From Pecten maximus (taxonomy: Eukaryota), in the NCBI RefSeq assembly GCF_902652985.1, contig NC_047029.1, positions 22,134,001 to 22,198,000 on the forward strand: DNA of 64,000 bases, read 5' to 3'. Below are positions 6,484 through 33,009 of this stretch, piece after piece. The notes below the pieces were generated by a model. It was not told where the DNA came from, searched no databases, and worked only from the letters and a program-made list of their open reading frames with translations. The number at the start of each line of letters is the position of its first letter. The stretch's first letter is position 1. Both the position numbers and the translations under genes were made by a program.

Positions 6484-7045
6484 TGAGGGGACGGGTGTAT
6501 AGGGGGACGACTACAGTCAGGGTCATGTGAGGACGGGTGTATAGGGGAACGACAACAGTCAGGGTCATGTGAGGACGGGTGTATAGGGGAACGACAACAG
6601 TCAGGGTCATGTGAGGACTGGTGTATAGGGGAACGCCAACAGTCAGGGTCATGTGAGGACGGGTGTATAGGGGAACGACAACAGTCAGGGTCATGTGGGG
6701 ACGGGTGTATAGGGGAACGCCAACAGTCAGGGTCATGTGGGGACGGGTGTATAGGGGAACGACAACAGTCAGGGTCATGTGGGGACGGGTGTATAGGGGA
6801 ACGCCAACAGTCAGGGTCATGTGGGGATGGGTGTATAGGGGAACGCCAACAGTCAGGGTCATGTGGGGACGGGTGTATAGGGGAACGACAGCAGTCAGGG
6901 TCATGTGAGGACTGGTGTATAGGGGAACGCCAACAGTCAGGGTCATGTGGGGACGGGTGTATAGGGGAACGACAACAGTCAGGGTCATGTGGGGACGGGT
7001 GTATAGGGGAACGCCAACAGTCAGGGTTATGTGGGGACGGGTGTT
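6484..7045. repeat. 42-bp minisatellite
   Basis: Unit ggacgggtgtataggggaacgacaacagtcagggtcatgtgg, about 13 copies. Confidence 0.97.
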
Positions 7046-8789: not shown

Positions 8790-8944
8790 GAAACATTTAT
8801 ACTCCGATTCAACAAACAATGTTAATGTAGCCAATACGATAACAATAAGATATATTCAATATTCAGCTTAAAATTCTCAAATTAAATGAGTCAATGTATG
8901 TTTAGCTTCCCTTCGCCACGTCCTATGTATGGGCACTTCAGGCA

Positions 8945-10525: not shown

Positions 10526-11122
10526 TTGAGGTATGTTTTGTCGTGTATGTATGTTGATGTTGAGGTATGTTTTGTCGTGTATGTTGATGTTGAGGTATGT
10601 TTTGTCGTGTGTGTTGATGTTGAGGTATGTTGTGTCGTGTATGTTGATACTGAGGTATGTTTTGTGGTGTGTGTTGATACTGAGGTATGTTGTGTCGTGT
10701 ATGTTGATGTTGAGGTATGTTTTGTCATGTGTGTTGATACTGAGGTATGCTTTGTCGTGTATGTTGATACTGAGGTATGTTTTGTCGTGTGTGTTGATAC
10801 TGAAGTATGTTTTGTGGTGTGTGTTGATGTTGAGGTATGTTTTGTCGTGTGTGTTGATACTGAGGTATGTTTTGTCGTGTATGTTGATACTGAGGTATGT
10901 TTTGTCGTGTGTGTTGATACTGAGGTATGTTTTGTCGTGTGTGTTGATATTGAGGTATGTTTTGTCGTGTATGTTGATACTGAGGTATGTTTTGTCGTGT
11001 GTGTTGATACTGAGGTATGTTTTGTCGTGTGTGTTGATGTTGAGGTATGTTTTGTCGTGTGTGTTGATGTTGTGTGTGTTTTGTCGTGTGTGTTGATGTC
11101 GAGGTATGGTTTGTCGTGTGTA
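10526..11122. repeat. 30-bp minisatellite
   Basis: Unit tgaggtatgttttgtcgtgtgtgttgatac; produces the four repetitive ORFs in the track. Confidence 0.97.
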
Positions 11123-11269: not shown

Positions 11270-12699
11270 CTTTAAAAAACAAATATAAACTTCAATGCTT
11301 ATGAATAACATTTGAACGAATGAGATCAAAAGAGTTATGTCCTAATAATTTCGGGCCTTGGGTATTACTTTAATAAATTCACCACACTACACATTGGCTA
11401 TCAGTTTTCTTAGCACCAGTAATGTCCATTTAATTGGTTTGTTCAATTTACTAAACATCTGCTATTGTTTTAATTAACCGGAACATACTTCATAGTCAAC
11501 ACTTTTGAGTTGCATGATAACGAAAGAAACATTTTCCTGATAAACGTGTCTGGACACTCTCCAGAAAATCCTTAAAAAAGTGAGGCACCGAATATCAACA
11601 ACTGACAAAGAAAAATTATTTATAAAGAAAAATGATTAAGTAAAATATGATATAACTAACAATGGCGTGAAATCTAAGACCTTCAATTGGCAGATGAAGC
11701 AGAAATCAATATTTTCGGCTGCTCAAAACGGATGTTAATACTCTCGTGTTGCTACTAGCTTCAAACTGTAAAAAATATGCACACTAAAAAATGTGGATGA
11801 CCGTGGAAAAAAAACGAAAATCAACTTTAATTGTAAATCTTAAAAGTAAATTGGATTTGCATAACTCTCTGTCAGACATCTTTTGTTAAAACTGAAAATG
11901 TAAACCAGCATCCTAAATATTGTAGTGGTTGCGTTAACTTTCGGTTTCCGGACCCTGGAATATCGAGAATGGTATTAAAATGTGATAATCATAAAGAGCT
12001 AGAAAGGACTAACTCATAATGTAGTGAGAGCTTCTTCACAGCTTTTACTTTCATACAATTTCATTGATCGTTTTCATCATACAAAAAAAGTAATGTACAA
12101 AGATTGTCTAAAAAGACGGAAATATCTATCTATACATGGAACATACAGCAACATATATTGAATTGTTCTCAAACCAACCTGTCGAGTTAATGTAGGTGAA
12201 TTATGATATCTACATATACAGGTTATAACGACGTCGTTGTAATGATCATTCCAATCCTACGGAGCTTTGTCCAACTAATGAGAATCTCTTTATTAATTGG
12301 CTTGTCATAAGGATATCGGTAACACGTGATTTCCTTGGTTGTTCAGGTTGAAACGTATTATATCACGAGGTATAGAAGATAAATTAATTTGGAACCAGAG
12401 GGAAATGAAAAATCCACCTTAGCATTGTAATATATCTAACACGGGCGATATTTGATAAAATGCTTGATATTATTTCTAAGTGAATCTTTTGTGCATATAA
12501 AACCGGTGATGTCATAAAAATAATAATTGAAGTCTGATTATCGATACAAATAATGAAATAAACACAAAGAAGACCACACATTTCCTTTATAATTTCGTCG
12601 ATGACTAATTCGCCAAATGTTTTTGGATCATTACCCATAAAAAATGTTTTCTTTATTTTTCTACTTTTAAATATGACCCATACTGACGGATATACTATA

Positions 12700-14060
12700 T
12701 CATAGGGTCAACACACAGGGACAAAATATCACAACATAAACACACGGGGAAAATATATCATAACGTAAACACACAGGGACAAAATATATCATTACATCAA
12801 CACACAGGGACAAAATATATCATAACGTAAACACACAGGGACAAAATATATCATAACGTAAACACACGGGGACAAAATATATCATAACGTAAACACACAG
12901 GGACAAAATATATCATAACATAAACACACAGGGACAAAATATATCATAACGTAAACACACAGGGACAAAATATATCATAACGTAAACACACAGGGACAAC
13001 ACGGGGACAAAATATATCATAACGTAAACACACAGGGACAAAATATATCATAACGTAAACACACAGGGAGAAAATATATCATATCGTAAACACACAGGGA
13101 CAAAATATATCATTACGTAAACACACAGGGACAAAATGTATCACAACGTAAACACACAGGGAGAAAATATATCAAAACGTCAACATACAGGGACAAATAA
13201 TTCATAACGTAAACACACAGGGACAAACTATATCGTAACGTAAACACACAGGGACAAAATATATCACAGCGTAAACACACAGAGAAAAAAATATATCATA
13301 ACGTTAACACACAGGGACAAAATATATATCATAACTTAAACACACAGGGACAAACTATATCGTAACGTAAACACACGGGGACAAAATACAACATAACGTA
13401 AACACACAGGGACAAAATATATTATAACGTCAACACACAGGGACAAAATATATCATAACGTTAACAGACGGGGACAAAATATATCATAACGTAAACACAC
13501 AGGGACAAAATATATCATTACATCAACACACAGGGACAAAATATATCAACGTAAACACACAGGGACAAAATATATCATAACGTAAACACACAGGGACAAA
13601 ATATATCACAACGTAAACACACAGGGACAAACTATATCATAACGTAAACACACAGGGACAAAATATATCACAACGTAAACACACAGGGACAAAATATATC
13701 ATAACGTAAACATACAGGGACAAAATATATCATAACGTAAACACACAGGGACAAAATATATCATAACGTAAACACACAGGGACAAAATATCTCATATCGT
13801 CAACACACAGGGACAAATATATCATAACTTAAACACACAGGGACAAAATACATCATAACGTAAACAAACGGGGATAAAATATATCATAACGTAAACACAC
13901 AGGGTCAAAATATATCACAACGTAAACACACGGGGACAAAATATATCAACGTTAACACACAGGGACAAAATATATTATTACGTAAACACACAGGGACAAA
14001 ATATATCACAACGTAAACACAGAGTGACAAAATATATCATTACGAAATACACCGGGAACA
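12700..14060. repeat. 31-bp minisatellite
   Basis: Unit atatatcataacgtaaacacacagggacaaa, more than 40 copies. Confidence 0.97.
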
Positions 14061-15440: not shown

Positions 15441-15570
15441 NNNNNNNNNNNNNNNNNNNNNNNNNNNNNNNNNNNNNNNNNNNNNNNNNNNNNNNNNNNN
15501 NNNNNNNNNNNNNNNNNNNNNNNNNNNNNNNNNNNNNNNNNNNNNNNNNNNNNNNNNNNNNNNNNNNNNN
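15441..15570. other. Assembly gap
   Basis: 130 N. Confidence 1.
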
Positions 15571-16810: not shown

Positions 16811-17739
16811 AGAGACTATAAGTTGGGCAAGCTGACCAAGTTGGGCAAGCTGACCAAGTGACCTGGCACTCATCCCGGATCTTCACCTGAAGTTCCATGG
16901 TGACAAAAACATATTATTACTAATGACAACTTGTCTTATTAGTTGACGATATAATTGGCGTTTCACAACCTAACTTTAATATGGTATTTTTTCATTTAAT
17001 CAAACAAAACTACTTACCATATGTTAGTGACAAATAAAAAAAATACAAGAAATATGTTTAGAGTCGTACAGCAAAACTGGTTGAGATAAGAGGTACCGGA
17101 TTTCCAAGGTCTATCAGTGCACAATGAATAGCTATATATGCACGCTTGTGATCAGATACCTGTTAGAGTTGCCGCCCCTTGGCAATAGTCCGACCGTCAG
17201 ACATAATCTGAGAGACAAGACGTATTTTTTTCCAAAATTTCTGACCGTCAGCCATAATCTGAGAGATAAAATGTAATTCTTTCCAAATACAGAAAATAAT
17301 AGGAAGACAATTTCTGGTAAACACTGTCAGATTGTGATTTATATTGCATCTCTAGTGTTGTGATGGGGAATTCTCGTTCTCGGTATCCATGCCATACCTT
17401 AATGAATTGTGATTATAATAAAAGACAAGTCTTAATTCAACAGACGCTAAATAAGTAATGATAAAACCATCATATTAATGATGATAATTATACGGAACGG
17501 GTGTCACAAAAACATTGAATAGTTTACAATACAGATCACTATACAAAATGACGTATAATATTCACATGTGAAGTGATGTTTTTTTTCTTCTTCTGGAAAT
17601 TATTTATCTATATTATATTTCATGTCTTTGTTTGGTAGTTTTGGATGTAATTATAAATAAAAAGTTCAAAACAATAGGTTGTTTTCTGATAGTTTTAATA
17701 AATAAGAAAATGTACACTGAAATGTGAATACATAAATAT

Positions 17740-18110
17740 CGTAAAATTCGCGCGTTAAGGCCAAGGGAGCGATGGACCGGGAATAACATTTTGAATATTA
17801 ATGTTTGATTTTAACTTTTTTTGCCGTCTTGGATTTCCTGAATAAGTTTCGTGCGTTGATCGTGCAAATGTGATAGTCACGGCATTAAACATCATTTAAA
17901 ATCATCTCACTTCAGATTTTAGACGCTCCAATCCAAGACAAAATAAAAGATTTTGTTGTATTAATCGATTATGTAATTCTCGTCAGACTGATTGCAATAT
18001 ATATATGATAAAGATGATATTGACGAGCTATCGTCTACACATATGAAAGAATATTAATAAAATATTGCAACTTCCGGTTTGACGTCCGTGCAGGATGTCG
18101 CCAATCGCGT
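17740..18110. promoter_or_regulatory. Possible promoter region
   Basis: Locally CpG-richer, with a YY1-like aaatccaagacggc (minus, ~17822-17836) and an ETS-like acttccggt (~18070). Motif-only evidence. Confidence 0.25.
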
Positions 18111-18499
18111 GATTCGTTGTATGGAGGCACATGTAGGGAAATACTCTCGAGGTTATGAGGTAGTATACTTGTATGAGTATTTGTACAAATGCATAATTGG
18201 TAACACACGGCAATTAATTGCGACAAAACGAAAATGGACAAAAACAATGAGAAATACGATTTGATAAAAAGCTGGAGAGTAATTACATAAACACAGAAGA
18301 ACATTAATGTTATCGAGGAAACCATTTCAATTGTCTTTTACTGTAAGTCTCAACATGTAGTGATCGCGATCTTCACATTCCACGTCCGCAAAAGGTCTAT
18401 ATTCTCTTTATACCGAGATCCTCGATCAGGTTAAAATACAGTATATGCACATATAAAGAATGAAGTACTCATATAATGTATATGAATTGTATGCGAATA

Positions 18500-18662
18500 A
18501 ATAGGCAACGTATTTAACGATACTGGCTTCGACAAACGTCTACAAAACTAGACCGCATTTTGCACACTTCGTCAGCAGTGAAAAGTTTCTGATAGTGTTG
18601 GTGTCATAACAGGCGTCTCTCGATGAATCCGTTTATATATCAGCCAGTCTTGTTACTGTAGC
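18500..18662 (-). other. Probable non-coding 3'UTR exon of the prodomain gene (left boundary arbitrary)
   Basis: Strong acceptor ctttctttctttcag| at 18663. All three frames stop within 30 nt. Confidence 0.5.
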
Positions 18663-18690
18663 CTGAAAGAAAGAAAGTCAAGATAAATAG

Positions 18691-19215
18691 TTTGGTTTAC
18701 TTTGTTTAACGTCCTATTAACAGCTAAGGTCATTTAAGGACGGCCTCCCGTGCGTGCGACATGAATGCGTGTGGTGAGTGAATATGTGTGTTTTTGGAGG
18801 CTGCGGTATGTTCGTGTTAAGTCTCCTTGTGATAGGCCGGGACTTTTGCCGATTTATAGTGCTACCTCACTGAAGCATACTGCCGAAGACACCCAGCAGG
18901 ACACCCCACCCGGTCACATTATACTGACAACGGGCGAACCAGTCGTCCAACTCCTTGTATGCTGAGCGCTAAGCAGGAGCAGTAACTACCATTTTTAAAG
19001 ACTCTGGTATGTCTCGGCCAGGGGACAGAACCCAAAGCCTTCCTCACGGGGGCGAACGCTCAACTAAAGGCCAAAAGTGAGGCAGTGTCAAGGGAGACGT
19101 TAGGAAGAAGAAAGTTGTTAAGAAAGAAGAGAAAGATAAGATCCCAAATTTAGTCGCCTCTTACGATCATGCAATGGGGGCAGCAGGTACGATTCTTACG
19201 CCCTACCTGCAGGGT
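18691..19215 (-). mobile_element. Full-length tRNA-derived SINE (Meta-domain-like core) with 14-bp TSD
   Basis: TSD gtcaagataaatag at 18677-18690 and 19216-19229. A/B-box-like head (tggcctttagttgagcg...ggttctgtccc), core taaaaatggtagt..gctcctgcttagcgctcagca, and an aaac-rich tail. Confidence 0.9.
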
Positions 19216-19652
19216 GTCAAGATAAATAGACATGTCCAGTTCTTGATTTCTTTTATAGTCTTTCATAATTCCCAAAATATACAACAGCTCCCTCTTGCTT
19301 GAATTCGTACATAATTACTCATTACTACAATTAATGATTTGCGCCAATAACGGTTTCTATATATAGTAATGTTCATATTTGCACTGATCTGTTCCAAAAA
19401 TAATGATCCGCTAAAATGTGTGTCCGCCAGAAATAACGACATGTAGAGTATGTATGATAACATTGACATAAATAAGTTCTAGGTTTTACAAATATTTTAC
19501 ATTCCCTGATGTAGATTATAAGCTATGCCCATCTGTTTAATGTCAGACCTTATTTTGAAATTTATAAAATCAAACCATCGACACAGGTACCATTGTAGTA
19601 TTTTAGTTAAATGCTATATATAACTTACGTTGATAACTGAATTCCTGCTGTT

Positions 19653-19834
19653 CTAACTGTCGTCGTAGAATTGTTGGATTAGTCTGGCTTTCTTCATCTG
19701 AGACTGTCGATGGGTCTCCTCAATACTCCTCTTCTTCCTGATGTCCATCACCGGGCGAGTCTGGGTCCACACCTCGAGGATTGGGGCACGGTAGCTGTTC
19801 ATCATAATCGGATTATGACCCAGGCATCCAACCT
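19653..19834 (-). CDS. TGF-beta prodomain-only gene, last coding exon (furin site + 24-aa tail)
   Basis: ttttcag| acceptor. Reads EVGCLGHNPIMMNSYRAPILEVWTQTRPVMDIRKKR/SIEETHRQSQMKKARLIQQFYDDS*. 'PILEV' matches the P.L.+ strand that precedes TGF-beta furin sites. The exon continues to a gtaagt donor at 19628. Confidence 0.85.
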
Positions 19835-20287
19835 CTGAAAATTATTTGATGAAAATTAATTTTCTTTATCAATGAGCGATGAGTAATTCAAATATCAACA
19901 TACAACTGATACATTAAGTTGATCAATTTCAGTTGGTGCCATACTCTATTTCATTTGTTTATTTATTGAAATACTAGTTTTAATTTATCTTACATATGCT
20001 TTAAGTACTCTGATTAAGTGACTCTTTGCAGAGAAATGAAGGCCGACAGTATGTGTGTTGGTTGGCAAGGGTATAACCAGGACAAACTTCAAATTAGCTA
20101 TGAATTAGTACCACAGCTCCTTTGCCTTTGTGCTACACAATGTGATATATTATTGCAAGTTGTGATTTTGTCTGTTTCTCTACAGAGACAGCCATGATCA
20201 ATCAAACCTATCGAAGTTCACATCATTGGTACTGTGTGTTGTGATTATTTCGGTATTTATGCATCAGTAGATGGAAGCATAACCAAC

Positions 20288-20512
20288 CTATATGAGACGA
20301 GCAATCTCCCTGTACGAACACGTTGTGCGCGTTGAAGTCCGTTATACGTCTGATTGGTGAGGAACTCTGCCATCTTTCCACTTTGATCTCCAGACCGTAC
20401 CGACGTCGGTGTCGCCTCATCCAGTCATTGACAGCGTCAGTCACATTAAAATGTATCCAACGTTCTTCTTCCCATTCCAGGACGTCTACATCTAACGTCT
20501 GCATACGAGGTC
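20288..20512 (-). CDS. TGF-beta prodomain-only gene, exon 5
   Basis: tgatag| acceptor, |gttggt donor, 225 nt, phase 1-1. Contains WIHFNVTDAVNDW...YGLEIKV, the hallmark prodomain motif W..FDVT.AV..W....GL.+.V. Confidence 0.92.
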
Positions 20513-21139
20513 CTATCAAACAGTAACAAAACAATTTGAGAAATGGTGGAAAAACGGAGAAAAAACAACAAAGGAAAACCATCGCAAAGATTAGGAGGGA
20601 ACAACATAGGAACGGTAAAAAGGGAAGAACATAGTAGAAATAGCACAGGATATAGTCGGTAGACGAAATCTAGCATTAGGTGGAGTCACCTGGGCGAACT
20701 AACTAACTACGGTAACCAGGGATACAATAATAGTAACAAGGGGACACAAAAGTAACAGTAACAAGAGAAACGCGCGCGAGACGTGTTACTTGGGAACACC
20801 AAACTTAAAAGGGGGAGGTTGTCTTCTTAACAAAAACAACCAGGAAGCATCATGACAGAGGCTACAAGGAAATATCAAAACAATAAAATTTATAACGTTA
20901 TGAACTTGGTTCCTACCCTGACTTCCCTGTTGATTCAAGGATAAGTGAATATAATTGACATTGACAAATCATCCAACACATGAAAATAGGAATAGTTTTG
21001 GTGAAAAGCTTACGAAATAGAAGTAGGAAAGGGCCAAAATGGAACCCAAACGGTGCATCCGATTTCAACGCGAATCAATGAAGCGTTTGTGTGAATATTT
21101 CTGTCGTTGATTTGTCCATTCGTATGGGGTGTTACTTAC

Positions 21140-21250
21140 GCCTCATTCTGTTGTGTCTGTTCGTCCGGCGTGGCCGGAGTGCTTGTAGGTACTGATTGAC
21201 CTCCACCAGCAGCCTCACGTCCTGATCATCATAAGCCGGACAGCCGCATC
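21140..21250 (-). CDS. TGF-beta prodomain-only gene, exon 4
   Basis: ttttcag| acceptor, |gtaagt donor, 111 nt, phase 1-1. Reads GCGCPAYDDQDVRLLVEVNQYLQALRPRRTNRHNRMR. Confidence 0.85.
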
Positions 21251-22454
21251 CTGAAAAAGAGCAAGAAAAGTGAATTCAGTCGTTTTACATATCCATCTTG
21301 TACTGGTGCACCGATGATAATTATGAAACGGTTTATTTTGTTTTGTTTGTAAGTGTTCAATGTTTTCGCAACAGCCGAGGTCATAAGAGGACAGGTGTCA
21401 AGGCGACACCTATTAGAGGAAAACACAGCATGGACAGAGAGAGCAGTCAGAAACAAAAGAAATTGTTAAGCCCCAAATGTTGCAATTGGACGGAAAATCT
21501 GTTCTGGTATCTTCGTTGTCATCTAAATCGAAGACAGAAGAAAATCCTTGATTCTTCACAGGCCCCACTTTTAGTCGCCTTGTACGATTAACATGCAGTA
21601 GGATACAGCGGGCATTCTTACTGGGTTCTCCAATGTCATCTGATCGGAAAACATTCGATAAACCACCCCCTACACAGCAGAGGGCTCCACCATTAGTCTC
21701 CTCTTAGGATATAAGAGATATAAGAGGCCAATTCTTGTCCCACTCCTGCTCGGGTTATGATCACAAGGTCAGGACTTATCTGCCATAAAATCGATGGAAA
21801 ATAAAGGTATTTTCTCTCGTTTATAGTGTGTACGCCGGCCCAAGTTTCATCAATATCCCTTGATTTAAGAAAATTACTTGAAATTTTCCACAGGAAAGCC
21901 CTGAAGAATTATACAATATAAGGAAAGTCCCTAGGATTTTTTTATTAAGTCATTTCATTTCTTTTTCTTTTTGCTATCGAAAGTTACAATGCAACACTTA
22001 AACGTGCGATGCTGATCTCAGGCAAATATAAGCGTAGTGGCCAACGAATCGCCTACCGAGAAAAGAATCAGAACTAGTAACAGTTGTAGAGAGTTTCAAA
22101 GTCCATTTTATATGATCTGTAGCAAAGTCAGCAAGAGCGGATAATTAACTTGTCGACTTGGATACATTGACCGTGGTGTTTTTAAATATATAAGCGACGG
22201 CACAGGAGTGGTGCATTATTATATCAATAGCAATATACGGAGATGAGTAAATAGTATGTATCTCCAACTAGTATATCTAAATCCGCAGAGTGTACAACAA
22301 AGCAAACATATACATTCACTTTTACTGTTGACGTACCTTTACGGTTAAACAAATACAAATAAAAGAATTAATGTATGTTGGTGGATTATATAAATAAAAA
22401 CTATACAAAACACACACAAGATATAAGTGTCTTCCAATAAGTTAGACACAATAG

Positions 22455-23070
22455 AGTCCGTGATGTAAGGGGGGCAAACAACCTCCTAAGTCCTTCTGGG
22501 ACTCGTCAGTGATGTTAGGGGGACCAACCACCTCATAAGTCCTTCTGGGACTCGTCAGTGATGTTAGGGTGATCACCCACCTCCTAACTCCTTCTGGGAC
22601 TCGTCAGTGATGTAAGGGTGATCACCCACCTCCTAACTCCTTCTGGGACTCGTCAGTGATGTAAGGGGGGCAAACAACCTCCTAAGTCCTTCTGGGACTC
22701 GTCAGTGATGTTAGGAGGACCAACCACCTTCTAAGTCCTTCTGGGACTCGTCAGTGATGTTAGGCGGATTAACCACTTTCTAGATCTAAGTCCCTCTGGG
22801 ACTCGTCAGTGATGTTAGGGGGACCAACCATCTCCTAAGTCCTTCTGGGAGTCGTCAGTGATGTTAGGGGCATTAACAACCTCCTAAGTCCGTCTGGGAC
22901 TCGTCAGTGATGTTAGGAGGACCAACCACCTTCTAAGTCCTTCCGGGACTCGTCAGTGATGTTTGGCGGATTAACCACTTTCTAGATCTAAGTCCCTCTG
23001 GGACTCGTCAGTGATTTAGGGGATCAACCACCTTCTAAGTCCCTCTGGGACTCGTCAGTGATGCTAAGGT
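22455..23070. repeat. 49-bp intronic minisatellite
   Basis: Unit tccttctgggactcgtcagtgatgttagggggaccaaccacctcctaag, about 12 copies. Confidence 0.95.
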
Positions 23071-23150
23071 CCTAAGAGATTCACTACACATCTCCAAAGT
23101 GTAATAAAACGGTAAAGTAAACATCATCAATACCTGTCAATATTTCTTAC

Positions 23151-23297
23151 CTAACCTGGTTCTTGCGAACAAACTCAGAGTCGCATTCTTAGCCGTGACG
23201 TCACCAGCTGGGAAGGTATCGACGTTGAAGAAAAGATGCATGGAATTGTCATCTGGGTGATTCCACATGTCTGGGTCAATAGCGTCAGGCAACAAAC
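23151..23297 (-). CDS. TGF-beta prodomain-only gene, exon 3
   Basis: taatag| acceptor, |gtaaga donor, 147 nt, phase 1-1. Reads CLLPDAIDPDMWNHPDDNSMHLFFNVDTFPAGDVTAKNATLSLFARTRL, with the arm-domain 'LxFxV...A.LxL' pattern. Confidence 0.88.
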
Positions 23298-24125
23298 CTA
23301 TTAACAAAGAATATGTGGCATACAGTCAATATCGTCAGGCAGAGGACCTATTATACAAAGATCGTGCTTCGTACAGTCAATATCATCAGACAGCGGACCT
23401 ATCATACAAAGATCATGCATCGTACAGTCAATATCGTCAAGCAGCGCACCTATTAAATGAAGATCATGTTTTGTTCAGCCAATAACGTCACGCCGCGCAC
23501 CTATTAAATATACGAGGGCTGATTGATAAGTTGCGAGCCTCGTATTGAAGAAGGAACTCAATGTTGTTCTTTTTAAGTCCTACTATTCCCTGACTATATA
23601 GGGCCGTGTACCCAAGGACTGGTCTCACTTGCTTAGTTTATATCGACGAGGTAGCACTCTCAAGTAAACAAGACAAGCGGCTTTTGGAAAATGGACAAAA
23701 TCGGCAAGGATTAGGATGAAAGAGTCTGTCATTGCAATGACTACCATTCACGATTGTGGCTTTAAATTGATTGAACATCCGCCTTAATTACCTGATCTCG
23801 CTCTATCAGACTTTCATCTGTTTCTAAAACCGAAAACAGCTATTTCAGGCACCCTAACCCTAACATGCAGTTGATGACTTTATGGACAGCCAAGAAAAGG
23901 AGTTCTGTAAAAGTGGCATTGAGACCCTTAAACACCGCTGGCAAAAGTGTATGGATACTGAAGGGGATTATTTTGAAAAATGATACAATATGTCCGGTAA
24001 AATTCAAATCCTCAATACGAGGTTCACAACTTATCAATCAGCCCTTGTAGACCATGTTTCGTAGTCTATAGCGTCAGGCAGCGCACCTATTAAATTAAGA
24101 CCAAGCTTCGTAAAGTGAATGATGT
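23283..24125. repeat. Degenerate ~51-bp array overlapping the exon-3 acceptor, interrupted by a mariner
   Basis: cgtcaggcag..cacctatta..aagatc...cgtacagtcaatat units at 23283, 23333, 23384 and onward, resuming after 24049. Confidence 0.8.
23513..24047 (+). mobile_element. Internally deleted mariner transposon
   Basis: TA flanks and ~37-bp TIRs (cgagggctgattgataagttgcgagcctcgtattga / tcaatacgaggttcacaacttatcaatcagcccttg). Remnants HPP*LPDLALSDFHLF (YSPDLAPSDF motif) and RWQKCMDTEGDYFEK*. Confidence 0.92.
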
Positions 24126-24261
24126 CAGAAAATAATGACAACAATACTGGTTGATATTTCTAGATATATTCTTAGGTAGGATGCCTTAAAACAACGGTTC
24201 ATGCAATTGCACATACTGGATGATAAAAATCTCTGGGAGTTCTGATATTAAGTTTCCTTTA

Positions 24262-24950
24262 ATTCTTACATGATACAGAGTAGCAGCTCTGGCTTTCCAT
24301 CGTGGAATTTCGGATATACTGTTAAATACTTACATGGTACCGATTAGCAGTTCAGGCTTCCATCATGAGGGTTCGGATATACTGTTAAGTACTTACATGA
24401 TGCGGAATAGCAGTTCAGGCTTCCATCATGAGGGTTCGGATATACTGATAAGTACTTACATGATGCCGATTAGCAGTTCAGGCTTCCATCATGAGGGTTC
24501 GGATATACTGTTAAGTACTTACATGATACCGATTAGCAGTTCGGGCTTCCATCATGAGGGTTCGGATATACTGTTAAGTACTTACATGATACCGATTAGC
24601 AGTTCAGGCTTCCATCATGAGGGTTCGGATATACTGTTAAATACTTACATGGTACCGATTAGCAGTTCAGGCTTCCATCATGAGGGTTCGGATATACTGT
24701 TAAGTACTTACATGATGCGGAATAGCAGTTCAGGCTTCCATCATGAGGGTTCGGATATACTGTTAAGTACTTACATGATACCGATTAGCAGTTCAGGCTT
24801 CCATCATTAGGGTTCGGATATACTGTTAAGTACTTACATGCTACCGATTAGCAGTTCAGGCTTCCATCATTAGGGTTCGGATATACTGTTAAGTACTTAC
24901 ATGATGCGGAATAGCAGCTCTGGCTTTCCATGGTAAGGTTTCGGATATAA
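24262..24950. repeat. 63-bp minisatellite overlapping the exon-2 donor
   Basis: cttaca motif every ~63 bp from 24265 to 24896 (11 copies). Confidence 0.95.
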
Positions 24951-25049
24951 CGGCTGTAGTTCTGAGGCCTGTCCATCATGCTGCTGTCTATGGTAGGGAG
25001 AGTATTCCAGCCCATCTCTCTCATGAAGTTCTGTCTGATCATACGTAAC
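24901..25049 (-). CDS. TGF-beta prodomain-only gene, exon 2 (alpha1/latency-lasso-like region)
   Basis: ttccag| acceptor, |gtaagt donor, 149 nt. Reads (M)LRMIRQNFMREMGWNTLPTIDSSMMDRPQNYSRYIRNLTMESQSCYSAS, resembling the 'I+..IL..LG+...P' prodomain helix. Confidence 0.85.
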
Positions 25050-26829
25050 CTGGAATGAAGATGTCAAATGCTGTTGTTACGACGATGTTTATTTTTTATT
25101 TTAATTAACACCCAGAGAAAGACCGACGGCATATATTGTTCTCTAGAAAGTAGGTAACCGTACAATGATGTTTATAGTACTACCTCACTAGTAAGTATGA
25201 TTTGTAAGAGACGACTCTCTGTGTTTTGTTTTCTTTCAAAACACACCTTCCTCTGCCTTATATCCCATTGGTCACTGCCTTCATTTGAAAGTGTTTGCCT
25301 CAGCGAAGAAGACTTTGGGTTCTGTTTAAGTCTGAGCTATTTCAGATTTTGTAAATTAGTAGCTGCATCTATTTAGCGGGATGAATGATTCTCCCATTGT
25401 CGGTATAATGTGACCGGTGTGGTATCTTGCTTACGGCCTTCAAGAGTATACATCAGTGTTATGCGCTACCACGCGGATGCAAACCCGGACATACCGCAGC
25501 CTCCCAAATCACAGTCATAACATGCATGCAGCTCGCAAACATTAGTGGTCATCCTGAAAGCTGTTGACAATGACATCTTGGAAGCTCACGTTTTAACTGT
25601 AAATGTTATGAAAGGATGTTTGCATTATCACAAATGCTTATATTAAGAGTTTGCTATACAGTTCACCCGACAATAGCACAATAAACGGAAGTAGAAATTC
25701 AAAGAAGGTATCTATTTTAAAATGCAATAAGTTGATATTCAAACTTAGTGTTGCAATTTCGTCAATTCGGCTATTTCAGTATCAGGTAAGGACGAAAGGT
25801 TATAAAATGAACAATATGGAGAAATACAACAAAAACGAGACATTTTCAGCGTTTGGACACTGCTACATGATCTAGCCCATCATTCGATCACCCTGTTTCG
25901 TAAAGTTAGCTATATCAAAATTTATAAATCGACACAGAAAGCAAAACAAGAAATACTGAATTAACAAATAAGACACAAATTTGAACTTCAGGTTTAATCT
26001 GAGAATGTAAAGTAGTGTCGAGGGGAGTTCTGATATAATCTGTACATTACTGATGCTAACTCTAAACAAAGGAAGAAGGCAACATACATGATCATGTGTT
26101 TCGGAAGGATACGCGTCTCGGTTCAGAGAGTTTTAAAAGCGAAAACGTAAATGTTATTATATTAAAGTTGATATGTGGACGTGTTGTTTGATTTTTTGTG
26201 TGTTTTTCTAGCTATTATGTATTAGTATATAGAGGCGTAATCACATATATAGGCGTATAGATATAGGTACAATAAAGATTAAACAAAATATTCATTTATA
26301 TATTTATTTTTCTATACTTATATATTTACATGTACCTACATATTTCTCATACATGTATAATCAGAGTGAGGCTATAGGAGTTTTTTAATGACCTCTATGA
26401 ACTGGACTATAATGCTTACAAACGCCATGTAAGGAAGTTTTCTATATCGACCAGATGGTGCCTAAGGTACACTTAAGGGTTCTACATTGTCCTAAAAATA
26501 GCCAACATATGTTCCGACAAACTACCTAATAAGTTAAACATCACGCGCAAGGCTGGTGTATTGCATTATTAGGCTTCACTGTTGCATGGTTATATTAAAT
26601 CTTAATCAACCTTGAATATCGCGTTATCGTGATACATTCATACGTCATCTAATTGTTATCGTAAATATAATTCGTGTATTAAGGATACATGACCTTCTAT
26701 ATTTCGTTAAGGAAGAGTCCGGGTCAATGTATCAGATTCATCGCCGTGGGCCGCTCCTGGTTTCTATAATATCATGATTCAAATTAAAAATATGGAATCC
26801 GTTTTGTATCTTGAAAGAAATTTGGTATA

Positions 26830-27210
26830 ATTTATATTTGCGTATGGGATCCCAACACCTTAATCACAACATTGACAAACTAGAAATGGTCCAATGCAGG
26901 GCGGCGTGCTATGTGCTTGATTAACACCGGTATAATCATCGCACATCTATTGCGTCCTAAATGTTGGACAAGTTAAAACTGTGTCCCTAGCTGACAGACG
27001 ACGAGATGCTCCTCAGACTATTTTCTACAACACTGTCCACAATAAAGCCACAGTCGTAAATCACCCTTTAAAAACTGCATAACTGCCATCTTTCTTTCAG
27101 AATGAATAATTCTAAAACTAGAACTGCATCTTTCTTTACCAAAACTATGACAAAATAAAATAAGCTCCCACCAGATATTGTCTTGTCGTCCACAAATTCA
27201 TTCAAGTCTA
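26830..27210 (+). mobile_element. Degenerate LINE RT C-terminal fragment
   Basis: WDP....NIDKLEMVQCRAA motif (consensus W.P....I..LE.VQRRA.R). Confidence 0.7.
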
Positions 27211-27656
27211 CCACAATTAATAAAGCATCCATTCAATCAGAATACTTATCCTTTTTCATCTCTCTAATTACATTAGAAAAAAACATATATAATTAAAATT
27301 TGATCCCCCCCCCCTCTCATATTAACTATAGTTGGAATACGGCTTACCTCAAAGCCTCAAAAGAACCAGTAACAACCATAACCACACAGTATCATGTGTT
27401 GATAAATATGATTTCTATAATAGTATTAACCTGGTCGACTTTCTCCAATATTCAGTAGAAGAACAAGGAACAACTCGCGTGTCAACGAAACCATAGCTCA
27501 AAGATCTAGCTCAAAGTAATTAATGTCGGTTAAAAGCTCGGAGGAGATTGATTGTTTTACAAAATAATCCTTACATCTTTATTTTACCATTACTATTTAA
27601 ACAGTCTCTCAATATCGAATTTAAGTATTCATGATTTACAGCAAAGTAAATCAAAC

Positions 27657-28052
27657 AAGAGGCGCCTAAATTTCTAATGTCTTCCTTGACCACATCTCAC
27701 TTTTGGCAATTAGTTGAATGTTCGCCACTGTGAGGAAGGTTTTGCGTTCTGTTGCGTAGTCGAATAATACCAGAGTCTATAAAAATGGTAGCTGCTATTC
27801 CTGCTTAACATTTTAGGAGTGGAACGAACGGTTCGCTCGTTGGCCGGGTTGGATGTCCTGGTCGGTGTCCTCGGCAGTATGATTCTGTGAGGTAGCACTA
27901 TAAAGTCGACATAAGATTCTCGCTATTACAGGGAGACAAACATGAACATATCGCGACTTCCAAAACACACATATATGCATCTCACACATAAGGGGGCCGT
28001 CCTTAATGATCATAGTTGTTGAAAAGATGCTTAATAATAAAAACAAACTAAA
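27657..28052 (+). mobile_element. Diverged copy of the same SINE family
   Basis: cacttttggc..tagttga..gttcgcc head, ataaaaatggtagctgct core, gccgtccttaatga tail. Confidence 0.8.
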
Positions 28053-29344
28053 ACGATTTGACAAATTGTATTTTAGAGAGAAATTGCTTAATTATGTTGC
28101 CACAGTTACAACTGAGCTATCAATAATTAACCTGAACTTAAACATTCAGCTGAACGGGCAGGAGTTCGAAAAAAATGTAGAATTTTTCTTTTAAGCTAGT
28201 CGGGACGAAGTCCAGAGGAGCTATTGGCATACAGATTAGCTATTTCACATGGTCATTCGCTGTGACAAGACCTTTCCTTTAGTACTACATTTGCGGACCT
28301 GCTGATCTTGACCGTGACCTTTGACCTACTTTAACCTTGGCAACAGTATGTGTGACATTGGTACTGCCTTTGCTGACATTAACCGTTACCTTTGACCCAA
28401 TTTTTAAAAACCAATTCTGCATTCGATCCCTCTCGGCGAGCTATGTTTTCTTCTGACATATTTTGTTTGTACTATTACTGTGTGATCTAAGAAGAAAAGT
28501 CTGAAAGATCATTGCGCAAAAAAGGACAAAATATCCGCGTGTGTTCAGTCCGTTACAAAGGTGTAAATGAGTGTGAGGCAGTATATCTAATCTAAGGTCA
28601 AATCAGGGCCCAAGCTGTCAAATCATACACACTCTCCCATGCACCGCATTCTAAGGTCAATGATGTTATTGCAGAGTAATGACCGGCGATCGACCCCACT
28701 TACCAAGCCAAGTACAAGCCATCAGTAATAGGATGTTTGGTTTGGCTTTTCTCCATGGCACTATGGTCAATCTGACATGGCCACTGCCGTAATAACCTCC
28801 AATTAGATATTTGTAATAAGCATAATCTTTCCCGATATCAAATTTTATCATAGGTGATAAATTACGTAATTGTTAACACTTGTTATATATTTAAGGATTT
28901 CCACACTGAAACGAAAAATTAATCAAAATTGATAGTAAATAACAATAATGAATGAAATAAAGATTTACCCAGAAAATAATGAAAACGCACAAGGAGAATC
29001 AGAACGTTCCGACAGGGTAAGCGTCTTCTGCGTCATCGAAGACACCCCCATACAAATTTAGCTCTAATAACAATATAAGGTAAAGCCATGTAAAAAAAAA
29101 AAGGGAGAAAGGAGACCGTAGGAATATAAACCCGTAATGTTGGGGAAGCAGATTCAAGTCTGGGTTTTCTCTCACGTCCGATAAGCAGAACCAAACAAAC
29201 AACAAAACCATCCATTCAGAAAGGGGCCTTCATGATCCAGATACGTCATCATAAACACAATAACAAGTGTGCTGTACATCGTGTCTTTAGTTTTACTATT
29301 AACTTGATTTCTAACTTCAATGAAGGCTAAGTGACACAAAAGGT

Positions 29345-29450
29345 ATGGGGTAACCTGCCCGACCACGTGGGTTTTCTCCGGGCATTCCGGTTTCCTCAAA
29401 CACTAACCCTTCGCGCGCTTCCATAACTTGTTTCGCAAGTGTTGAACAAT
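29345..29450 (+). mobile_element. V-domain-like SINE fragment
   Basis: gggttttctccgggcattccggtttcctc. A reverse-orientation relative lies at 63340-63400. Confidence 0.5.
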
Positions 29451-31949
29451 GAATAAAGTTTACATACCCCTAATCCAATCAGTTCTTGGATAATAGGTTT
29501 CCCGAGTTGTCTCGAGTTATTCTCTTATCAAAGTTCATTTACAGTTTATTTTTGAACATAAGTTTTATCGAAACAATGTTATTTACAATAAAACAAACAA
29601 CCTGAATTTCCTGTGGGCGTTACATATCTTATCAATGTCTATTCCCGCTTTCGATTTCTGGTAAGGAACAGTATTGTCGCATTGCAACTAGGTCAGTAAA
29701 TGGAATGTGATGTATATAAGGTGTTCCATTTAAGGTCATCTTGTGGCATTATCATTATTTCCTAACGTCAACTATTATCAAAGGCCTAATTAGGACGCAA
29801 GTACAAATACCAATTAGTCGCGTGCTATCTGAAGACGTAATATACGGCGCTCACAAATCTGGCTTACATAACAAGTACTCCTCCCATGTCAGCGAGCAGT
29901 GTATTGTAAACTTTAACCACTGAATTTTCATTTGCTGTTTATTTATTAATTATCGTTCACGGCACTTTAATACTTATGTTCCTTTAATATTATTTCAGGG
30001 TTTTTCGTGCTTATTTCATTACGCTAAATTATTAATGCACTGATTGCATATTTTTGTACAAACATGCAATGAAATCGCTGTAAATCTCAACAATGAACAT
30101 TTCTCTAGGGCCAATACAAGGTTAGTTATAGTAATAAAGGGTGTCAATCAAACTGATATCTGGTATATAATTACATAAATGTGTTGATACACTCAATTAT
30201 GTAGAATAAAATGATACATTTTGCTTGGTTTAGTAAAAATTGAACATTACTTAAGACCGACAACTATCAAACACTTCCAAATTGTGTATAGTCTTAACAG
30301 TTTTGAAAAGCAGTTATGTTGTTATATAAATTGTCTCTTTTATGATGCAGATCAGTGCAATCCATTAAGATGTGTTTAACGGTAACGGTTCATTGTCTAT
30401 GATACACTGAGATATGTCCTTATTCTTCCATAACCCTTAAGACGGGTAAGAAAAAACCTCGTCTCGGCGATTGTCTTAAGGAGAGCATTCACCGATAATT
30501 GCTCTGATCGAGGGTAAGCTGTCCACCTATTCACTCGTGCATTTTGCCACTGTAAAGTTAGGTTTAAGATAGGTGAAATGAAGTTTGAAACTAGTGTTAA
30601 AAGCAGTGAAACTGTTATGAAATAATGAGTATAACATATACAATGTATATTAATAATATGTTATTTAAGTGGCAAGACAATCCATGTGTGTATCCTTCAT
30701 GATACAGTTATCTAATGAAATAGTGCATTTGAAACTTGAATTTCTAATGTTTGTATTATTTAAGCAAGCTACCAATATCTATGATTATTAATATTCAAAG
30801 AGCGGTCTCCTCCTTATACGAGCTGCATGCGTTTTTGAGAATTTCTAAAAAGTGTACGATGCGAGGAAAGAGTATCGTGTATATATAGGCGATATGATTG
30901 TTTTGCCACCGCGTGTATAGATTTTCATCGTCTTTGAAACAAAGCACGTGCTATGTACCGTCATTTTATAATTCCTATTAGTGATATAGATATTCATTAG
31001 GTGCCTCTCTTTTGCAATATACACTGATTGTAAAACCATACTCGAGTTACTGAGGAGGGCCTACATCCAACAGGTGTGCATTGCTTGCATTAGGTGTAAT
31101 TGTTGTGTTAATCAGTGCAAAACCTCTTGTTAATAGCAGCTTTCAATACAAATTGAACCTTATCTGAAGTAGAGCCAAATATTAATTAAACTGCGTCATA
31201 CAGCTGTTCCATTATTCTAGGTCTCGTCGTTGATGCTGAGACCATATTACGTCAATACCTAAAATAACTAAGGAAACTCAAAATTTCATGAAAGAAAATC
31301 TAGACCTGAGGTGCAATAACTTTCTATTCATGACGTCAGCAATGTTTTGCATGCATCTAACACACAGGGGACGCCGTCCTTAAATGGCCATAGCTGTTGA
31401 TATGACGCTAAACATTTCAAAACCAAACCAAATTTGTCATATAAGCTGCCTTTAACAGTGATATGTTCATATTTCATATCACTGGAGTGCACGATTTACT
31501 TTTATCCATGAATTCTCGCATATATATCAATCAGTTTATAATGACAAATGACATTATCGTGTTGATATAGTTAGTATTATTTAATATACTGAAATTTCTG
31601 TTCTGTATATCATTCCGGATGTGTACATTTTCGTATCCAGTCCTATGTGTTGTTATATTTCCTAAACAAATTTGACATTTTGACCTGATATATTGTAGTT
31701 GTTGCCCACAGCTGCAGTATGTAAACATCGCGAATAGATAACCCTCAAACAGTACAGTGTGATACCGTAGTGATAAATTAACTACACTACATAAGTATAA
31801 GATATTACTTAAATGGATTTGTTTGATAAATTTACACATGGGAGATGACCCCGTATAATGTACATTTAAACATTTAATTCTCTGGAATTGATAACTGAAA
31901 ATTAATTATATACGATGAATAACTAATAGAACACGCTTGTTGGTGTTTT

Positions 31950-32500
31950 TATTACTTATACATCACAATTTGTTTTTGTGATAAACTGAAACATCAAACT
32001 GGTTACTCTGTTTAACTAATTAATCAGACTTGTTATTGTGTTAACCTGAAACATCACACTTGTTATTGTGTTAACTGAAACATCACACTTGTTATTGTGT
32101 TAACTGAAACATCACACTTGTTATTGTGTTAACTGAAACATCACACTTGTTATTGTGTTAACTGAAACATCACACTTGTTACTCTGTTTAACTAATTAAT
32201 CACACTGGTGATTGCGTTTATTAAATCAGACTTGTTATTGTGTTAAACTGAAACATCACACTTGTTATTGTGTTTTATCAATACATCACTTGCTGTTATG
32301 TTTAACTAATAAATCACACTTGTAATTGTGTTTAACTAATATATAACACTTGTTATTTTGTTTGACTAATATATAACACTTGTTATTATGTTTAACTAAT
32401 ACATCACATTTGTTATTGTGTTTAACCAATAAATCACGCGTGTTTAACTGAAACACCATATACTTCTTATTGTGTTTAACACATCACACATTCGACTAAT
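31950..32500. repeat. ~29-bp minisatellite
   Basis: Unit aactgaaacatcacacttgttattgtgtt, degenerate at the edges. Confidence 0.9.
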
Positions 32501-32827
32501 ACATCATTGATTTCCCAAAGAGCTAACACTGGGCTAAAACACTCCCTACATACTATATATATTATCACTGGGTACTACCTAGTAAATAGCAGTTGAAGCT
32601 TTGATTTGCTCTGGTGTAGTATATATTTTTTCCAATTCATTACTGAGCTGATAATTTATTTACCACAACGATAATTAATTAAGTTGCCATTTACTTCATA
32701 CATTTAATTTACTAGTGAAATGCTTTGTTAATTGATCCATTGATACATTAATTTACAACTGAGCACACTAATTTGACATTGTGTTAATAAGCACTGAAAC
32801 AGTATAATGATAATTGATAATACGAAC

Positions 32828-33009
32828 ATGAATTGACGGCGCTGAGCAAGGTCAATGCGTGGAGAAGTACTGGCAGTAGCTTCAGGTGTTGTAGGCTGGT
32901 CAGTCCCTACCGGTTGTACCATCGGTGTGGTGACAGGGGGGTCACAGTAACACACGAGCACGTGCACACACAGAAGTTGTAAGACGAGCGTGTTACAAAG
33001 TCCAAACAT
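32828..33009 (-). CDS. TGF-beta prodomain-only gene, coding exon 1 (signal peptide + Pro/Thr-rich linker)
   Basis: ATG at 33009. MFGLCNTLVLQLLCVHVLVCYC is signal-peptide-like, followed by DPPVTTP...RIDLAQRRQF. Donor AT|gttcgt is phase 2 and matches the next exon. A candidate acceptor tttcag| at 33038 suggests an upstream 5'UTR exon. Confidence 0.75.

What the first reader, a model, noticed from the sequence alone, without database searches (positions are those of the whole stretch)
19653..33009. Secreted TGF-beta prodomain protein with no growth-factor domain
Seen: six minus-strand exons (182+149+147+111+225+182 nt) splice in frame with GT-AG sites into an intact 331-aa ORF. It has a signal peptide, an alpha1-like helix (LRMIRQNFMREMGW..LP), arm motifs (LFFNV..NATLSL; WIHFNVTDAVNDW..YGLEIKV; PILEV) and RKKR, then stops after 24 Cys-free residues. 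Established: TGF-beta/BMP/activin precursors carry a ~110-aa cystine knot after the furin site, and free prodomains (LAP, myostatin propeptide) can bind and inhibit ligands in trans. I saw no cystine-knot exon anywhere in the window. Inference: this is a stand-alone prodomain acting as an endogenous ligand trap or chaperone, or a carrier for a new peptide. From memory (unverified), Drosophila Anachronism may have a similar architecture. The clean exons despite heavily invaded introns argue against a pseudogene.
Basis: partly seen in the sequence, partly recalled or inferred. Interest (0 to 1): 0.88.

Follow-up and report, generated by a model that had tools for sequence, protein, structure and literature searches.

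The report
Stand-alone TGF-beta prodomain gene in bivalves
This scallop gene encodes a secreted TGF-beta-type prodomain with a furin site but no growth-factor domain; it is transcribed, conserved in scallops and mussels and under purifying selection, so it is probably a free-standing regulator of TGF-beta-family signals, not a broken gene.

Summary
Six minus-strand exons (182+149+147+111+225+182 nt to the stop) have canonical splice sites. They join in frame into a 331-aa ORF identical to the NCBI entry 'uncharacterized protein LOC117343959 [Pecten maximus]'. Spliced transcript contigs from four studies confirm every coding junction and carry the same TAG stop.

A GTAAGT donor 24 nt after the stop splices to a ~975-nt non-coding exon (18662 to about 17690).

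No cystine-knot exon was found in the window, in 80 kb downstream, or within 1.2 Mb on this chromosome.

Orthologues in Argopecten irradians (330 aa, same seven exons) and Mytilus (351 aa) also lack a growth-factor domain; partial Mizuhopecten and Ylistrum models exist. All five proteins scanned hit only Pfam TGFb_propeptide. The RxKR site is invariant. dN/dS is 0.14 between Pecten and Argopecten (dS about 1.1); the tail after RKKR is much less constrained (about 0.6).

Closest solved relatives are pro-TGF-beta2, -beta3 and -beta1. A co-fold with the scallop myostatin-like growth factor passed its controls (0.66 against 0.31) through the alpha1-helix and lasso region, which may reflect memory of solved complexes.

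Best reading: an ancient orphan prodomain acting on ligands in trans. The function is inferred, not shown.

The parts
32828..33009 (-). Exon 1, coding part: ATG at 33009, hydrophobic signal-peptide-like N-terminus, Pro/Thr-rich spacer, start of the alpha1-like helix. The 5'UTR extends further upstream by about 150 nt, judged from contig length.
   Evidence: The loose end at 25049 matches the exon's last bases. The contig reaches 332 nt beyond exon 2.
24901..25049 (-). Exon 2: alpha1-like helix and lasso-like segment (residues 61-110), with the conserved CY..SC pair.
   Evidence: (joint 23295/24899)
23151..23297 (-). Exon 3: start of the arm domain (LFFNV..NATLSL, with an invariant N-A-T).
21140..21250 (-). 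Exon 4: conserved CxC, the VRLLVEVNQ strand and a polybasic stretch (RPRR..RMRRPR).
   Evidence: (joints 21249/23150 and 20511/21139)
20288..20512 (-). Exon 5: core of the TGFb_propeptide match (W.HFNVT.AV.DW..GLEIKV).
   Evidence: Pfam PF00688, 31.4 bits, E 2e-7 on the exon alone
19629..19834 (-). Exon 6: end of the prodomain (PILEV), RKKR at 19739-19728, 24-residue tail at 19727-19656, TAG at 19655-19653, then 24 nt of 3'UTR before the GTAAGT donor.
18663..19628 (-). Intron 6, lying in the 3'UTR (GTAAGT ... TTTCAG). It is conserved in Argopecten irradians.
17690..18662 (-). Exon 7: non-coding 3'UTR with stops in all frames. ATTAAA lies at 17699. The 3' end is approximate, taken from contig lengths of 915-974 nt beyond the junction.
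   Evidence: 61% identical to the Argopecten 3'UTR

Best explanation
Shown: this is an intact, transcribed, single-copy seven-exon gene (Pecten maximus LOC117343959). Its 331-aa product has a signal-peptide-like N-terminus, a TGF-beta-family prodomain (alpha1-like helix, lasso-like segment, arm domain), an invariant RxKR convertase site and a 24-residue Cys-free tail. There is no growth-factor domain. Scallops and mussels share this architecture, and it is under purifying selection. Inferred: an ancestral TGF-beta-family precursor lost its cystine-knot exon or exons before the scallop-mussel split. The former junction to those exons survives as an intron at or just after the stop codon. The secreted prodomain was kept because it still grips growth-factor dimers of other TGF-beta-family genes in trans with its alpha1 helix and lasso. 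In that role it would act as an extracellular latency factor, trap or chaperone, as free LAP and the myostatin/GDF11 propeptide do when supplied experimentally. Convertase cleavage at RKKR removes the loosely constrained tail. Whether that step activates the protein, releases a peptide or is vestigial is open.
For: Gene model and expression: canonical splice sites and an in-frame ORF. Spliced contigs in four runs from four studies, with the TAG unchanged. 20 runs in 7 studies hold about 0.3 of the sampled words of a stretch that is 36% exon. Prodomain identity: Pfam TGFb_propeptide above cut-off on exon 5 alone and on the whole protein, with no TGF_beta hit. Profile against PDB: pro-TGF-beta2 E 2.8e-5, pro-TGF-beta3 1.3e-3, BMP10 prodomain 0.078. 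Foldseek top hits are all TGF-beta-family prodomains, pro-TGF-beta1 first. No growth-factor exon. Conservation: orthologues of 330 aa (Argopecten) and 351 aa (Mytilus) have the same six coding-exon boundaries. R304, K306 and R307 are invariant. dN/dS is 0.139 overall and 0.093 for the alpha1/lasso residues 56-120, against 0.60 for the tail. In Mytilus the figures are 0.25 for the prodomain and 0.66 for the tail. Binding competence: the co-fold of residues 50-307 with the scallop myostatin-like growth factor scored 0.66, best of 3 controls 0.31. That mark was reached by 51 of 78 solved complexes and 2 of 108 mismatched pairs. The runs agree in at least 54% of contacts and the partner's pLDDT is at least 63. 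The interface covers residues 54-105, 137-138 and 297-302, which is the canonical straitjacket surface.
Against: No binding or signalling experiment exists. The co-fold pass may come from memory of solved pro-myostatin and pro-TGF-beta complexes, and it does not say which ligand binds, if any. The AF2 model is poor (pLDDT 46.6, five-sequence alignment). There is no RGD motif, and the conserved cysteines do not all sit where LAP's do. An invariant furin site with nothing large to release is not explained by a pure trap model. Tissue and stage of expression are unknown because the runs are coded.
Confidence: 0.5

Rival explanations
1. The conserved prodomain fold is used for something unrelated to growth-factor binding, for example as a matrix, adhesion or shell-matrix protein, or as a binder of other partners.
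For: The fold also occurs outside TGF-beta precursors: bacterial multi-repeat proteins matched exon 5 at E 1e-5 to 1e-3, and BcsB appears among the Foldseek hits. The family is very divergent from every canonical prodomain, with the best in-genome paralogue at only 26 bits. Conserved polybasic stretches (RPRR..RMRRPR, RRHRRR) could bind glycosaminoglycans.
Against: The most constrained segment is the alpha1/lasso region (dN/dS 0.093), which in canonical precursors exists to hold the growth factor. The co-fold places exactly this segment on the growth-factor fingers.
Confidence: 0.25
2. The gene is a prohormone. The prodomain serves as a folding and secretion carrier, and the product that matters is the C-terminal peptide released at RKKR (24 residues in scallops, about 53 in mussels).
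For: The RxKR site is invariant across scallops and mussels. Tail length is exactly 24 residues in three scallops, with a shared LI..FY..-type ending. The tail is predicted helical at residues 310-329.
Against: The tail evolves 4-6 times faster than the prodomain by dN/dS (0.60 against 0.12 in scallops, 0.66 against 0.25 in mussels). Between scallops and mussels only one tail residue is invariant and the lengths differ. A roughly 285-residue carrier under strong constraint is out of proportion for a weakly conserved peptide.
Confidence: 0.15
3. It is a truncated pseudogene, an assembly artefact, or the growth-factor exon was simply missed (far away, in a gap, or in a rare isoform).
For: The intron immediately after the stop looks like a former coding junction. 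Two N runs lie downstream, at 5380-5528 and 15441-15570. Contigs cannot exclude rare isoforms.
Against: dS is about 1.07 while dN/dS is 0.14. The same short architecture is seen in independent genome assemblies of Argopecten and three Mytilus species and in Argopecten transcript contigs. The TAG is present in transcripts of four studies. Contig lengths put the transcript end near the ATTAAA at 17699, more than 2 kb before the nearer N run. The flanks of that N run are microsatellite-like, not exon-like. No growth-factor match lies within 1.2 Mb.
Confidence: 0.05

Closest known systems
Latency-associated peptide (LAP) of TGF-beta1/2/3
   Same: It is the best sequence and fold match. Both have an N-terminal alpha1 helix followed by a lasso-like Pro-containing segment, an arm domain with the W..F.VT..V..W motif, an RxKR/RxxR convertase site at the C-terminal end, and a multi-exon gene. 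LAP can rebind and neutralise TGF-beta in trans (established knowledge).
   Different: LAP is never encoded alone: it is always followed by the cystine-knot growth factor. Here there is no RGD motif. The CxC lies before the W-motif rather than after it, and identity is very low (12-15% in Foldseek). A published survey reports TGF-beta sensu stricto as absent from scallops (PMC10763453).
Myostatin/GDF11 propeptide
   Same: It is a free prodomain that inhibits its ligand in trans (established; e.g. PMC6537384, listed). Pro-myostatin is among the fold hits. The co-fold with the scallop myostatin-like growth factor passed its controls.
   Different: The myostatin propeptide is made from the same precursor as its ligand. 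The scallop myostatin gene has its own prodomain 6.7 Mb away on the same chromosome.
[quoted passage not shown]
   Same: They share the Pfam TGFb_propeptide domain and a signal-peptide-plus-furin-site layout.
   Different: All 12 contain the TGF-beta domain and have 2-6 exons (PMC10763453). This gene has 7 exons and no TGF-beta domain, and it is not in that survey. The best in-genome paralogue is only a 26-bit profile match.
Bacterial multi-repeat proteins with TGFb_propeptide-like repeats (I recall these as DNRLRE-domain proteins; the name was not checked here)
   Same: They carry the same W..(F/W)(D/N)VT..V..W..GL motif and matched exon 5 at E 1e-5 to 1e-3.
   Different: They are prokaryotic, with several repeats per protein, no alpha1/lasso segment and no furin site. 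They are not orthologous.
Drosophila Anachronism
   Same: It is a secreted glycoprotein. Any prodomain likeness is unverified.
   Different: No support was found in the paper library, and no sequence was compared here.

Membership tests
TGF-beta superfamily ligand precursor | N-terminal signal peptide | tested here: inconclusive
   There is a hydrophobic 22-residue N-terminus, modelled as a helix at residues 3-21. No signal-peptide predictor was available.
TGF-beta superfamily ligand precursor | Prodomain of the TGFb_propeptide family (PF00688) | tested here: met
   Exon 5 alone scores 31.4 bits and the whole protein 35.5 bits against a cut-off of 25.8; the Mytilus orthologues score 61 bits.
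TGF-beta superfamily ligand precursor | RxxR/RxKR convertase site at the end of the prodomain | tested here: met
   The site reads RKKR, RNKR or REKR, with R304, K306 and R307 invariant in five sequences. Cleavage itself was not tested.
TGF-beta superfamily ligand precursor | C-terminal cystine-knot growth-factor domain (PF00019) | tested here: not met
   There is no PF00019 hit on the protein or its orthologues, none in the window or within 1.2 Mb, and none in 80 kb downstream or in the orthologous loci with an HMM whose positive control worked. The ORF ends 24 residues after RKKR, and exon 7 has stops in all frames.
LAP-type latency prodomain (works-like test) | Prodomain fold superposable on pro-TGF-beta, pro-myostatin or pro-BMP9 prodomains | tested here: met
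   Foldseek ranks pro-TGF-beta1 first at E 2e-6, and free LAP 6p7j reaches TMt 0.62. The query model is of low confidence, pLDDT 46.6.
LAP-type latency prodomain (works-like test) | Alpha1 helix and lasso embrace the growth-factor fingers | tested here: inconclusive
   The co-fold scored 0.66, best of 3 controls 0.31, with the interface at residues 54-105. The pass may reflect memory of solved complexes. dN/dS of this segment is 0.093.
LAP-type latency prodomain (works-like test) | RGD integrin-binding motif (TGF-beta1/3 LAP) | tested here: not met
   There is no RGD in the 331-aa sequence.
LAP-type latency prodomain (works-like test) | Inhibition of a ligand in trans | not testable with these tools
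   This needs binding and Smad-reporter assays.
Pseudogene / decaying truncation | Neutral evolution (dN/dS near 1), frame disruptions, no expression | tested here: not met
   dN/dS is 0.139 at dS 1.07. The frame is intact in seven species' gene models. Spliced transcripts exist.
Peptide prohormone | Released peptide is the most conserved part of the precursor | tested here: not met
   Tail dN/dS is 0.60 (scallops) and 0.66 (mussels), against 0.12-0.25 for the prodomain. Only one tail residue is invariant between scallops and mussels.

The most novel reading that the evidence does not exclude
This would be the first natural, genomically stand-alone TGF-beta prodomain. On this reading an ancient precursor, possibly of the TGF-beta/activin/myostatin branch, lost its growth factor before scallops and mussels diverged. 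The prodomain has been kept since as a dedicated, convertase-processed extracellular latency factor or trap for ligands encoded elsewhere. That would be a new class of endogenous TGF-beta-pathway antagonist or chaperone, alongside noggin, follistatin and chordin.
Probability: 0.35. Interest if true: 0.8.

Novelty: new variant of a known kind. Interest (0 to 1): 0.66.

Why it matters
Prodomains of TGF-beta-family ligands are known to confer latency, targeting and trans-inhibition, but always as part of the ligand's own precursor. A prodomain kept on its own for hundreds of millions of years would show that this module can evolve into an independent extracellular regulator. It would also supply a natural, testable case for which ligands a free prodomain can control. 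It adds an overlooked member to the bivalve TGF-beta toolkit: the published scallop survey counted only genes with the growth-factor domain. Bivalve myostatin and BMP pathways are breeding targets for growth and shell formation. Finally, the stop codon sitting at the last exon junction gives a clear example of how domain loss leaves a trace in gene structure.

Tried and rejected
1. Relic of a growth factor in exon 7 or the tail. My growth-factor HMM found nothing over all open segments of the window and 80 kb downstream (best E 0.76, unrelated).
2. The N runs as hidden exons. I did not fill them. The flanks of 15441-15570 are microsatellite-like, and the transcripts appear to end before it.
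3. Close paralogue or parent gene in the genome. Exons 5 and 6 are single copy. The family profile hits the BMP2/4-like gene at only 26 bits, so the ancestral subfamily is unresolved.
4. Structure. The AF2 model from a five-sequence alignment reached only pLDDT 46.6. I used it for fold class only.
5. Wider distribution. The exhaustive HMMER search with exon 5 found only scallop and mussel relatives plus bacterial repeat proteins. Word-based searches with the profile and with the mussel protein added only Mytilus and Ylistrum. Absence from oysters or gastropods is not shown.
6. Literature. There are no hits for the locus names and none linking Anachronism to prodomains. One search was too generic and one was malformed.
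7. Earlier scan notes: none.
8. The Mytilus downstream neighbour flagged TGFb_propeptide (264-265 aa). Only its first exon lies in the fetched loci, so its nature is unresolved.
9. Pfam on coding-looking ORFs downstream (1908-2078, 3933-4190) gave nothing.
10. Joined model. No self-joined sequence was sent to any search tool. Pfam was run exon by exon by reference. The join was made only inside scripts, for the frame check, the identity test and dN/dS. Whole-protein searches used the identical database entry P0017 by its id.


Full report
**Where the window lies.** The window is G000:C15:22134001-22198000 of a 918-Mb genome in 3983 contigs. The protein encoded here is identical to NCBI 'uncharacterized protein LOC117343959 [Pecten maximus]', recorded on a contig of the same length as C15, 38,817,130 bases.

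**Checking the observation.**
- e1 33009-32828
- e2 25049-24901
- e3 23297-23151
- e4 21250-21140
- e5 20512-20288
- e6 19834 to the stop at 19655-19653

Every internal exon has an AG acceptor with a pyrimidine tract and a GT donor, four of them GTAAG. The phases fit and the product is 331 aa. The quoted motifs, the RKKR site (19739-19728) and the 24-residue Cys-free tail are all there.

I searched the exons one by one by reference. Exon 5 alone passes Pfam's TGFb_propeptide threshold (31.4 bits, E 2e-7); the other exons are too short to score. I did not send a self-joined sequence to any search tool. The join was made only inside scripts. Once the database returned the identical protein as P0017, I used that id for whole-protein searches. 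P0017 hits TGFb_propeptide (35.5 bits, residues 126-244) and nothing else.

**Transcripts.** Twenty public runs in seven studies hold about 0.3 of the sampled words of a 1.1-kb stretch that is 36% exon. I laid four runs from four studies on 19100-25099. Their contigs show the joints 19834|20288, 20511|21139, 21249|23150 and 23295|24899, all with CT..AC ends on the plus strand, which is GT..AG on the gene's strand.
- A loose end at 25049 reads the last bases of exon 1, so all five coding junctions are confirmed.
- No differing letter is reported at the TAG.
- The two coding variants seen are R230R and D126E.

Contigs do not stop or run on at the end of exon 6. They leave the genome at 19628 with a loose end that matches 18632-18661. 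The sequence shows AAC|GTAAGT at 19629/19628 and TTTCAG|G at 18663/18662. Exon 6 is therefore 206 nt, the TAG lies 24 nt before the last exon junction, and a seventh exon follows.
- The contigs extend 915-974 nt past the junction, which ends close to the only ATTAAA, at 17699.
- Exon 7 has stops in all three frames. Reading on past the TAG meets a TAA after 17 more codons.
- The transcript therefore continues, but not into a growth factor.

**No cystine-knot exon.**
- Pfam TGF_beta over the whole genome gave 17 matches, none in the window. The nearest on C15 are 1.2 Mb, 2.2 Mb and 6.7 Mb away, each with its own long upstream open frame.
- An HMM built from ten growth-factor domains of this genome found nothing better than E 0.76 in the window plus 80 kb downstream.
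- The same HMM found the split growth-factor exons of other genes, including a 27-residue piece at E 1e-5.
- The two N runs were left as they are. The nearer one (15441-15570) has microsatellite-like flanks and lies more than 2 kb beyond the apparent transcript end.

**Orthologues.** An exhaustive HMMER search with exon 5 found a 330-aa protein of Argopecten irradians (82% identical over the exon, 76% over the whole protein). It also found a 211-aa partial model of Mizuhopecten yessoensis and a 351-aa protein of Mytilus californianus. Further searches added M. coruscus, M. galloprovincialis and a partial Ylistrum balloti model.
- The five scanned with Pfam here hit TGFb_propeptide only, and PF00688 is the only precomputed family listed for the M. 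galloprovincialis entries; none carries a growth-factor domain.
- In the alignment the arm core, six cysteines (CY..SC, CxC, DC..7..C), an N-A-T sequon and R304/K306/R307 of the convertase site are invariant.
- The three scallop tails are each exactly 24 residues. The mussel tail is about 53 residues and shares one invariant residue with the scallop tails.
- The six coding-exon boundaries fall at the same profile positions in Argopecten and Mytilus.
- Argopecten transcript contigs map to its genome as seven exons, with the stop 16 nt before the last junction and a 1069-nt non-coding last exon.
- In Mytilus the protein match on exon 6 ends at residue 344 while the called gene ends about 390 nt further on. 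The last residues therefore appear to lie in a further exon.
- In all lineages the ORF ends at or next to the exon 6/7 junction. That is what one would expect if exon 7 once carried the growth factor; this is inference.

**Selection.** Results of the Nei-Gojobori dN/dS comparisons:

| Comparison | Region | dN/dS | Notes |
|---|---|---|---|
| Pecten vs Argopecten | whole CDS | 0.139 | dS 1.07, dN 0.148 |
| Pecten vs Argopecten | alpha1/lasso, residues 56-120 | 0.093 | lowest of all segments |
| Pecten vs Argopecten | arm | 0.115 | |
| Pecten vs Argopecten | tail | 0.60 | few sites |
| M. californianus vs M. galloprovincialis | prodomain | 0.25 | 192 recoverable codons in all |
| M. californianus vs M. 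galloprovincialis | tail | 0.66 | |

The gene is therefore not decaying. The prodomain, not the tail, is the constrained part.

**What it resembles.**
- A profile of five orthologues hits pro-TGF-beta2 (E 2.8e-5), pro-TGF-beta3 (1.3e-3) and the BMP10 prodomain (0.078) among solved structures.
- The AF2 model is weak (pLDDT 46.6). It has the expected order of elements: signal helix, long alpha1 helix at 50-72, arm strands, a short helix after the W-motif, and a helical tail.
- Foldseek returns TGF-beta-family prodomains almost exclusively at the top of the list: pro-TGF-beta1 first, then free LAP, pro-myostatin, pro-TGF-beta2, BMP9/10 prodomains and pro-activin A.
- Within the genome the gene is single copy. 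Its nearest paralogue is a 26-bit match to the BMP2/4-like prodomain, so the parental subfamily is unresolved.
- The published survey of scallop TGF-beta genes lists 12 ligands per species, all with the TGF-beta domain and 2-6 exons. It states that TGF-beta sensu stricto is absent. This gene is not among them (PMC10763453).
- No paper in the library names any of the orthologous loci.

**Mechanism.** It paired residues 50-307 with the growth-factor domain of the scallop myostatin-like gene (L006:1498-1848, minus strand).
- The score was 0.66, best of 3 controls 0.31. That mark was reached by 51 of 78 solved complexes and 2 of 108 mismatched pairs.
- The runs agree in at least 54% of contacts, and the partner's pLDDT is at least 63.
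- The confident interface is residues 54-105 (alpha1 helix and lasso) plus 137-138 and 297-302, set against the growth-factor fingers. This is the canonical straitjacket geometry.
- The tool warns that such a pass can come from memory of solved pro-complexes and does not identify the true partner. I take it to mean the orphan prodomain still looks binding-competent, and no more than that.

Together with the strongest constraint lying on the same segment, this makes trans-binding of ligands (trap, latency factor or chaperone) the best-supported function, at about 0.5. A growth-factor-independent role gets about 0.25 and a peptide-precursor role about 0.15. The invariant RxKR site is the one feature the trap model does not explain. 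Possible explanations are a tail that must be clipped for activity or a small released peptide; neither was tested.

**Verdict.** This is a real, expressed, anciently conserved stand-alone TGF-beta prodomain gene, catalogued so far only as 'uncharacterized protein'. It fails the defining test of a TGF-beta ligand, having no cystine knot, so it should not be filed as one. It is a new variant of a known kind. Its function is inferred and readily testable.

Noticed in passing
window 24265-24949 and 23275-23506; L044 about 20750-21510: Two minisatellites in intron 2 run into the flanking exons. A 63-nt array of 10.8 copies covers the last 49 nt of exon 2. A 51-nt array of 4.6 copies covers the first 23 nt of exon 3. 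In Mytilus californianus the end of exon 2 is likewise repeated about 8 times in intron 2, at a period of about 74 nt. The transcripts seen use only the first donor.
   Followed up: partly
window 24034-24144 (minus strand): An open segment in intron 2 reads ..LIGALPDAIDYETW.., resembling the start of exon 3 (LLPDAIDPDMW). It is probably an exon-3-like fragment carried by the repeats. No spliced contig was seen using it.
   Followed up: partly
L044:33459-39304 and L045:28585-31133: In both Mytilus genomes the next gene downstream on the same strand is also flagged TGFb_propeptide. Its product is only 264-265 aa, so it may be a second growth-factor-less paralogue in tandem. Only its first exon lies in the fetched loci. 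No such neighbour is seen in Pecten or Argopecten.
   Followed up: partly
window 5380-5528 and 15441-15570: These are two runs of N (149 and 130 nt). The second has ACAT-type microsatellite flanks.
   Followed up: no
window 1-5600 (minus strand): There are coding-looking open segments, for example 1905-2078 and 3930-4190 with acidic or Ser-rich stretches. They suggest another gene downstream. Pfam gave no hit on the pieces tried.
   Followed up: partly
window 1-546, 6482-7044, 7602-9798, 10527-11121, 12696-14057, 22456-23069, 31954-32444, 49322-49811, 55552-56885: The window is dense in minisatellites of 30-49 nt period. Several create long spurious ORFs on both strands.
   Followed up: no
window 19100-19299, 22300-22900, 23500-24100: These intronic or flanking stretches have very high summed contig depth in the RNA runs (hundreds to thousands) and many loose ends. 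They are dispersed repeats transcribed elsewhere, not part of this mRNA.
   Followed up: no
window 56873-57400 (plus strand): A 175-aa ORF shows a weak, sub-threshold zf-RVT match (E 0.033). It is probably a retroelement remnant.
   Followed up: no
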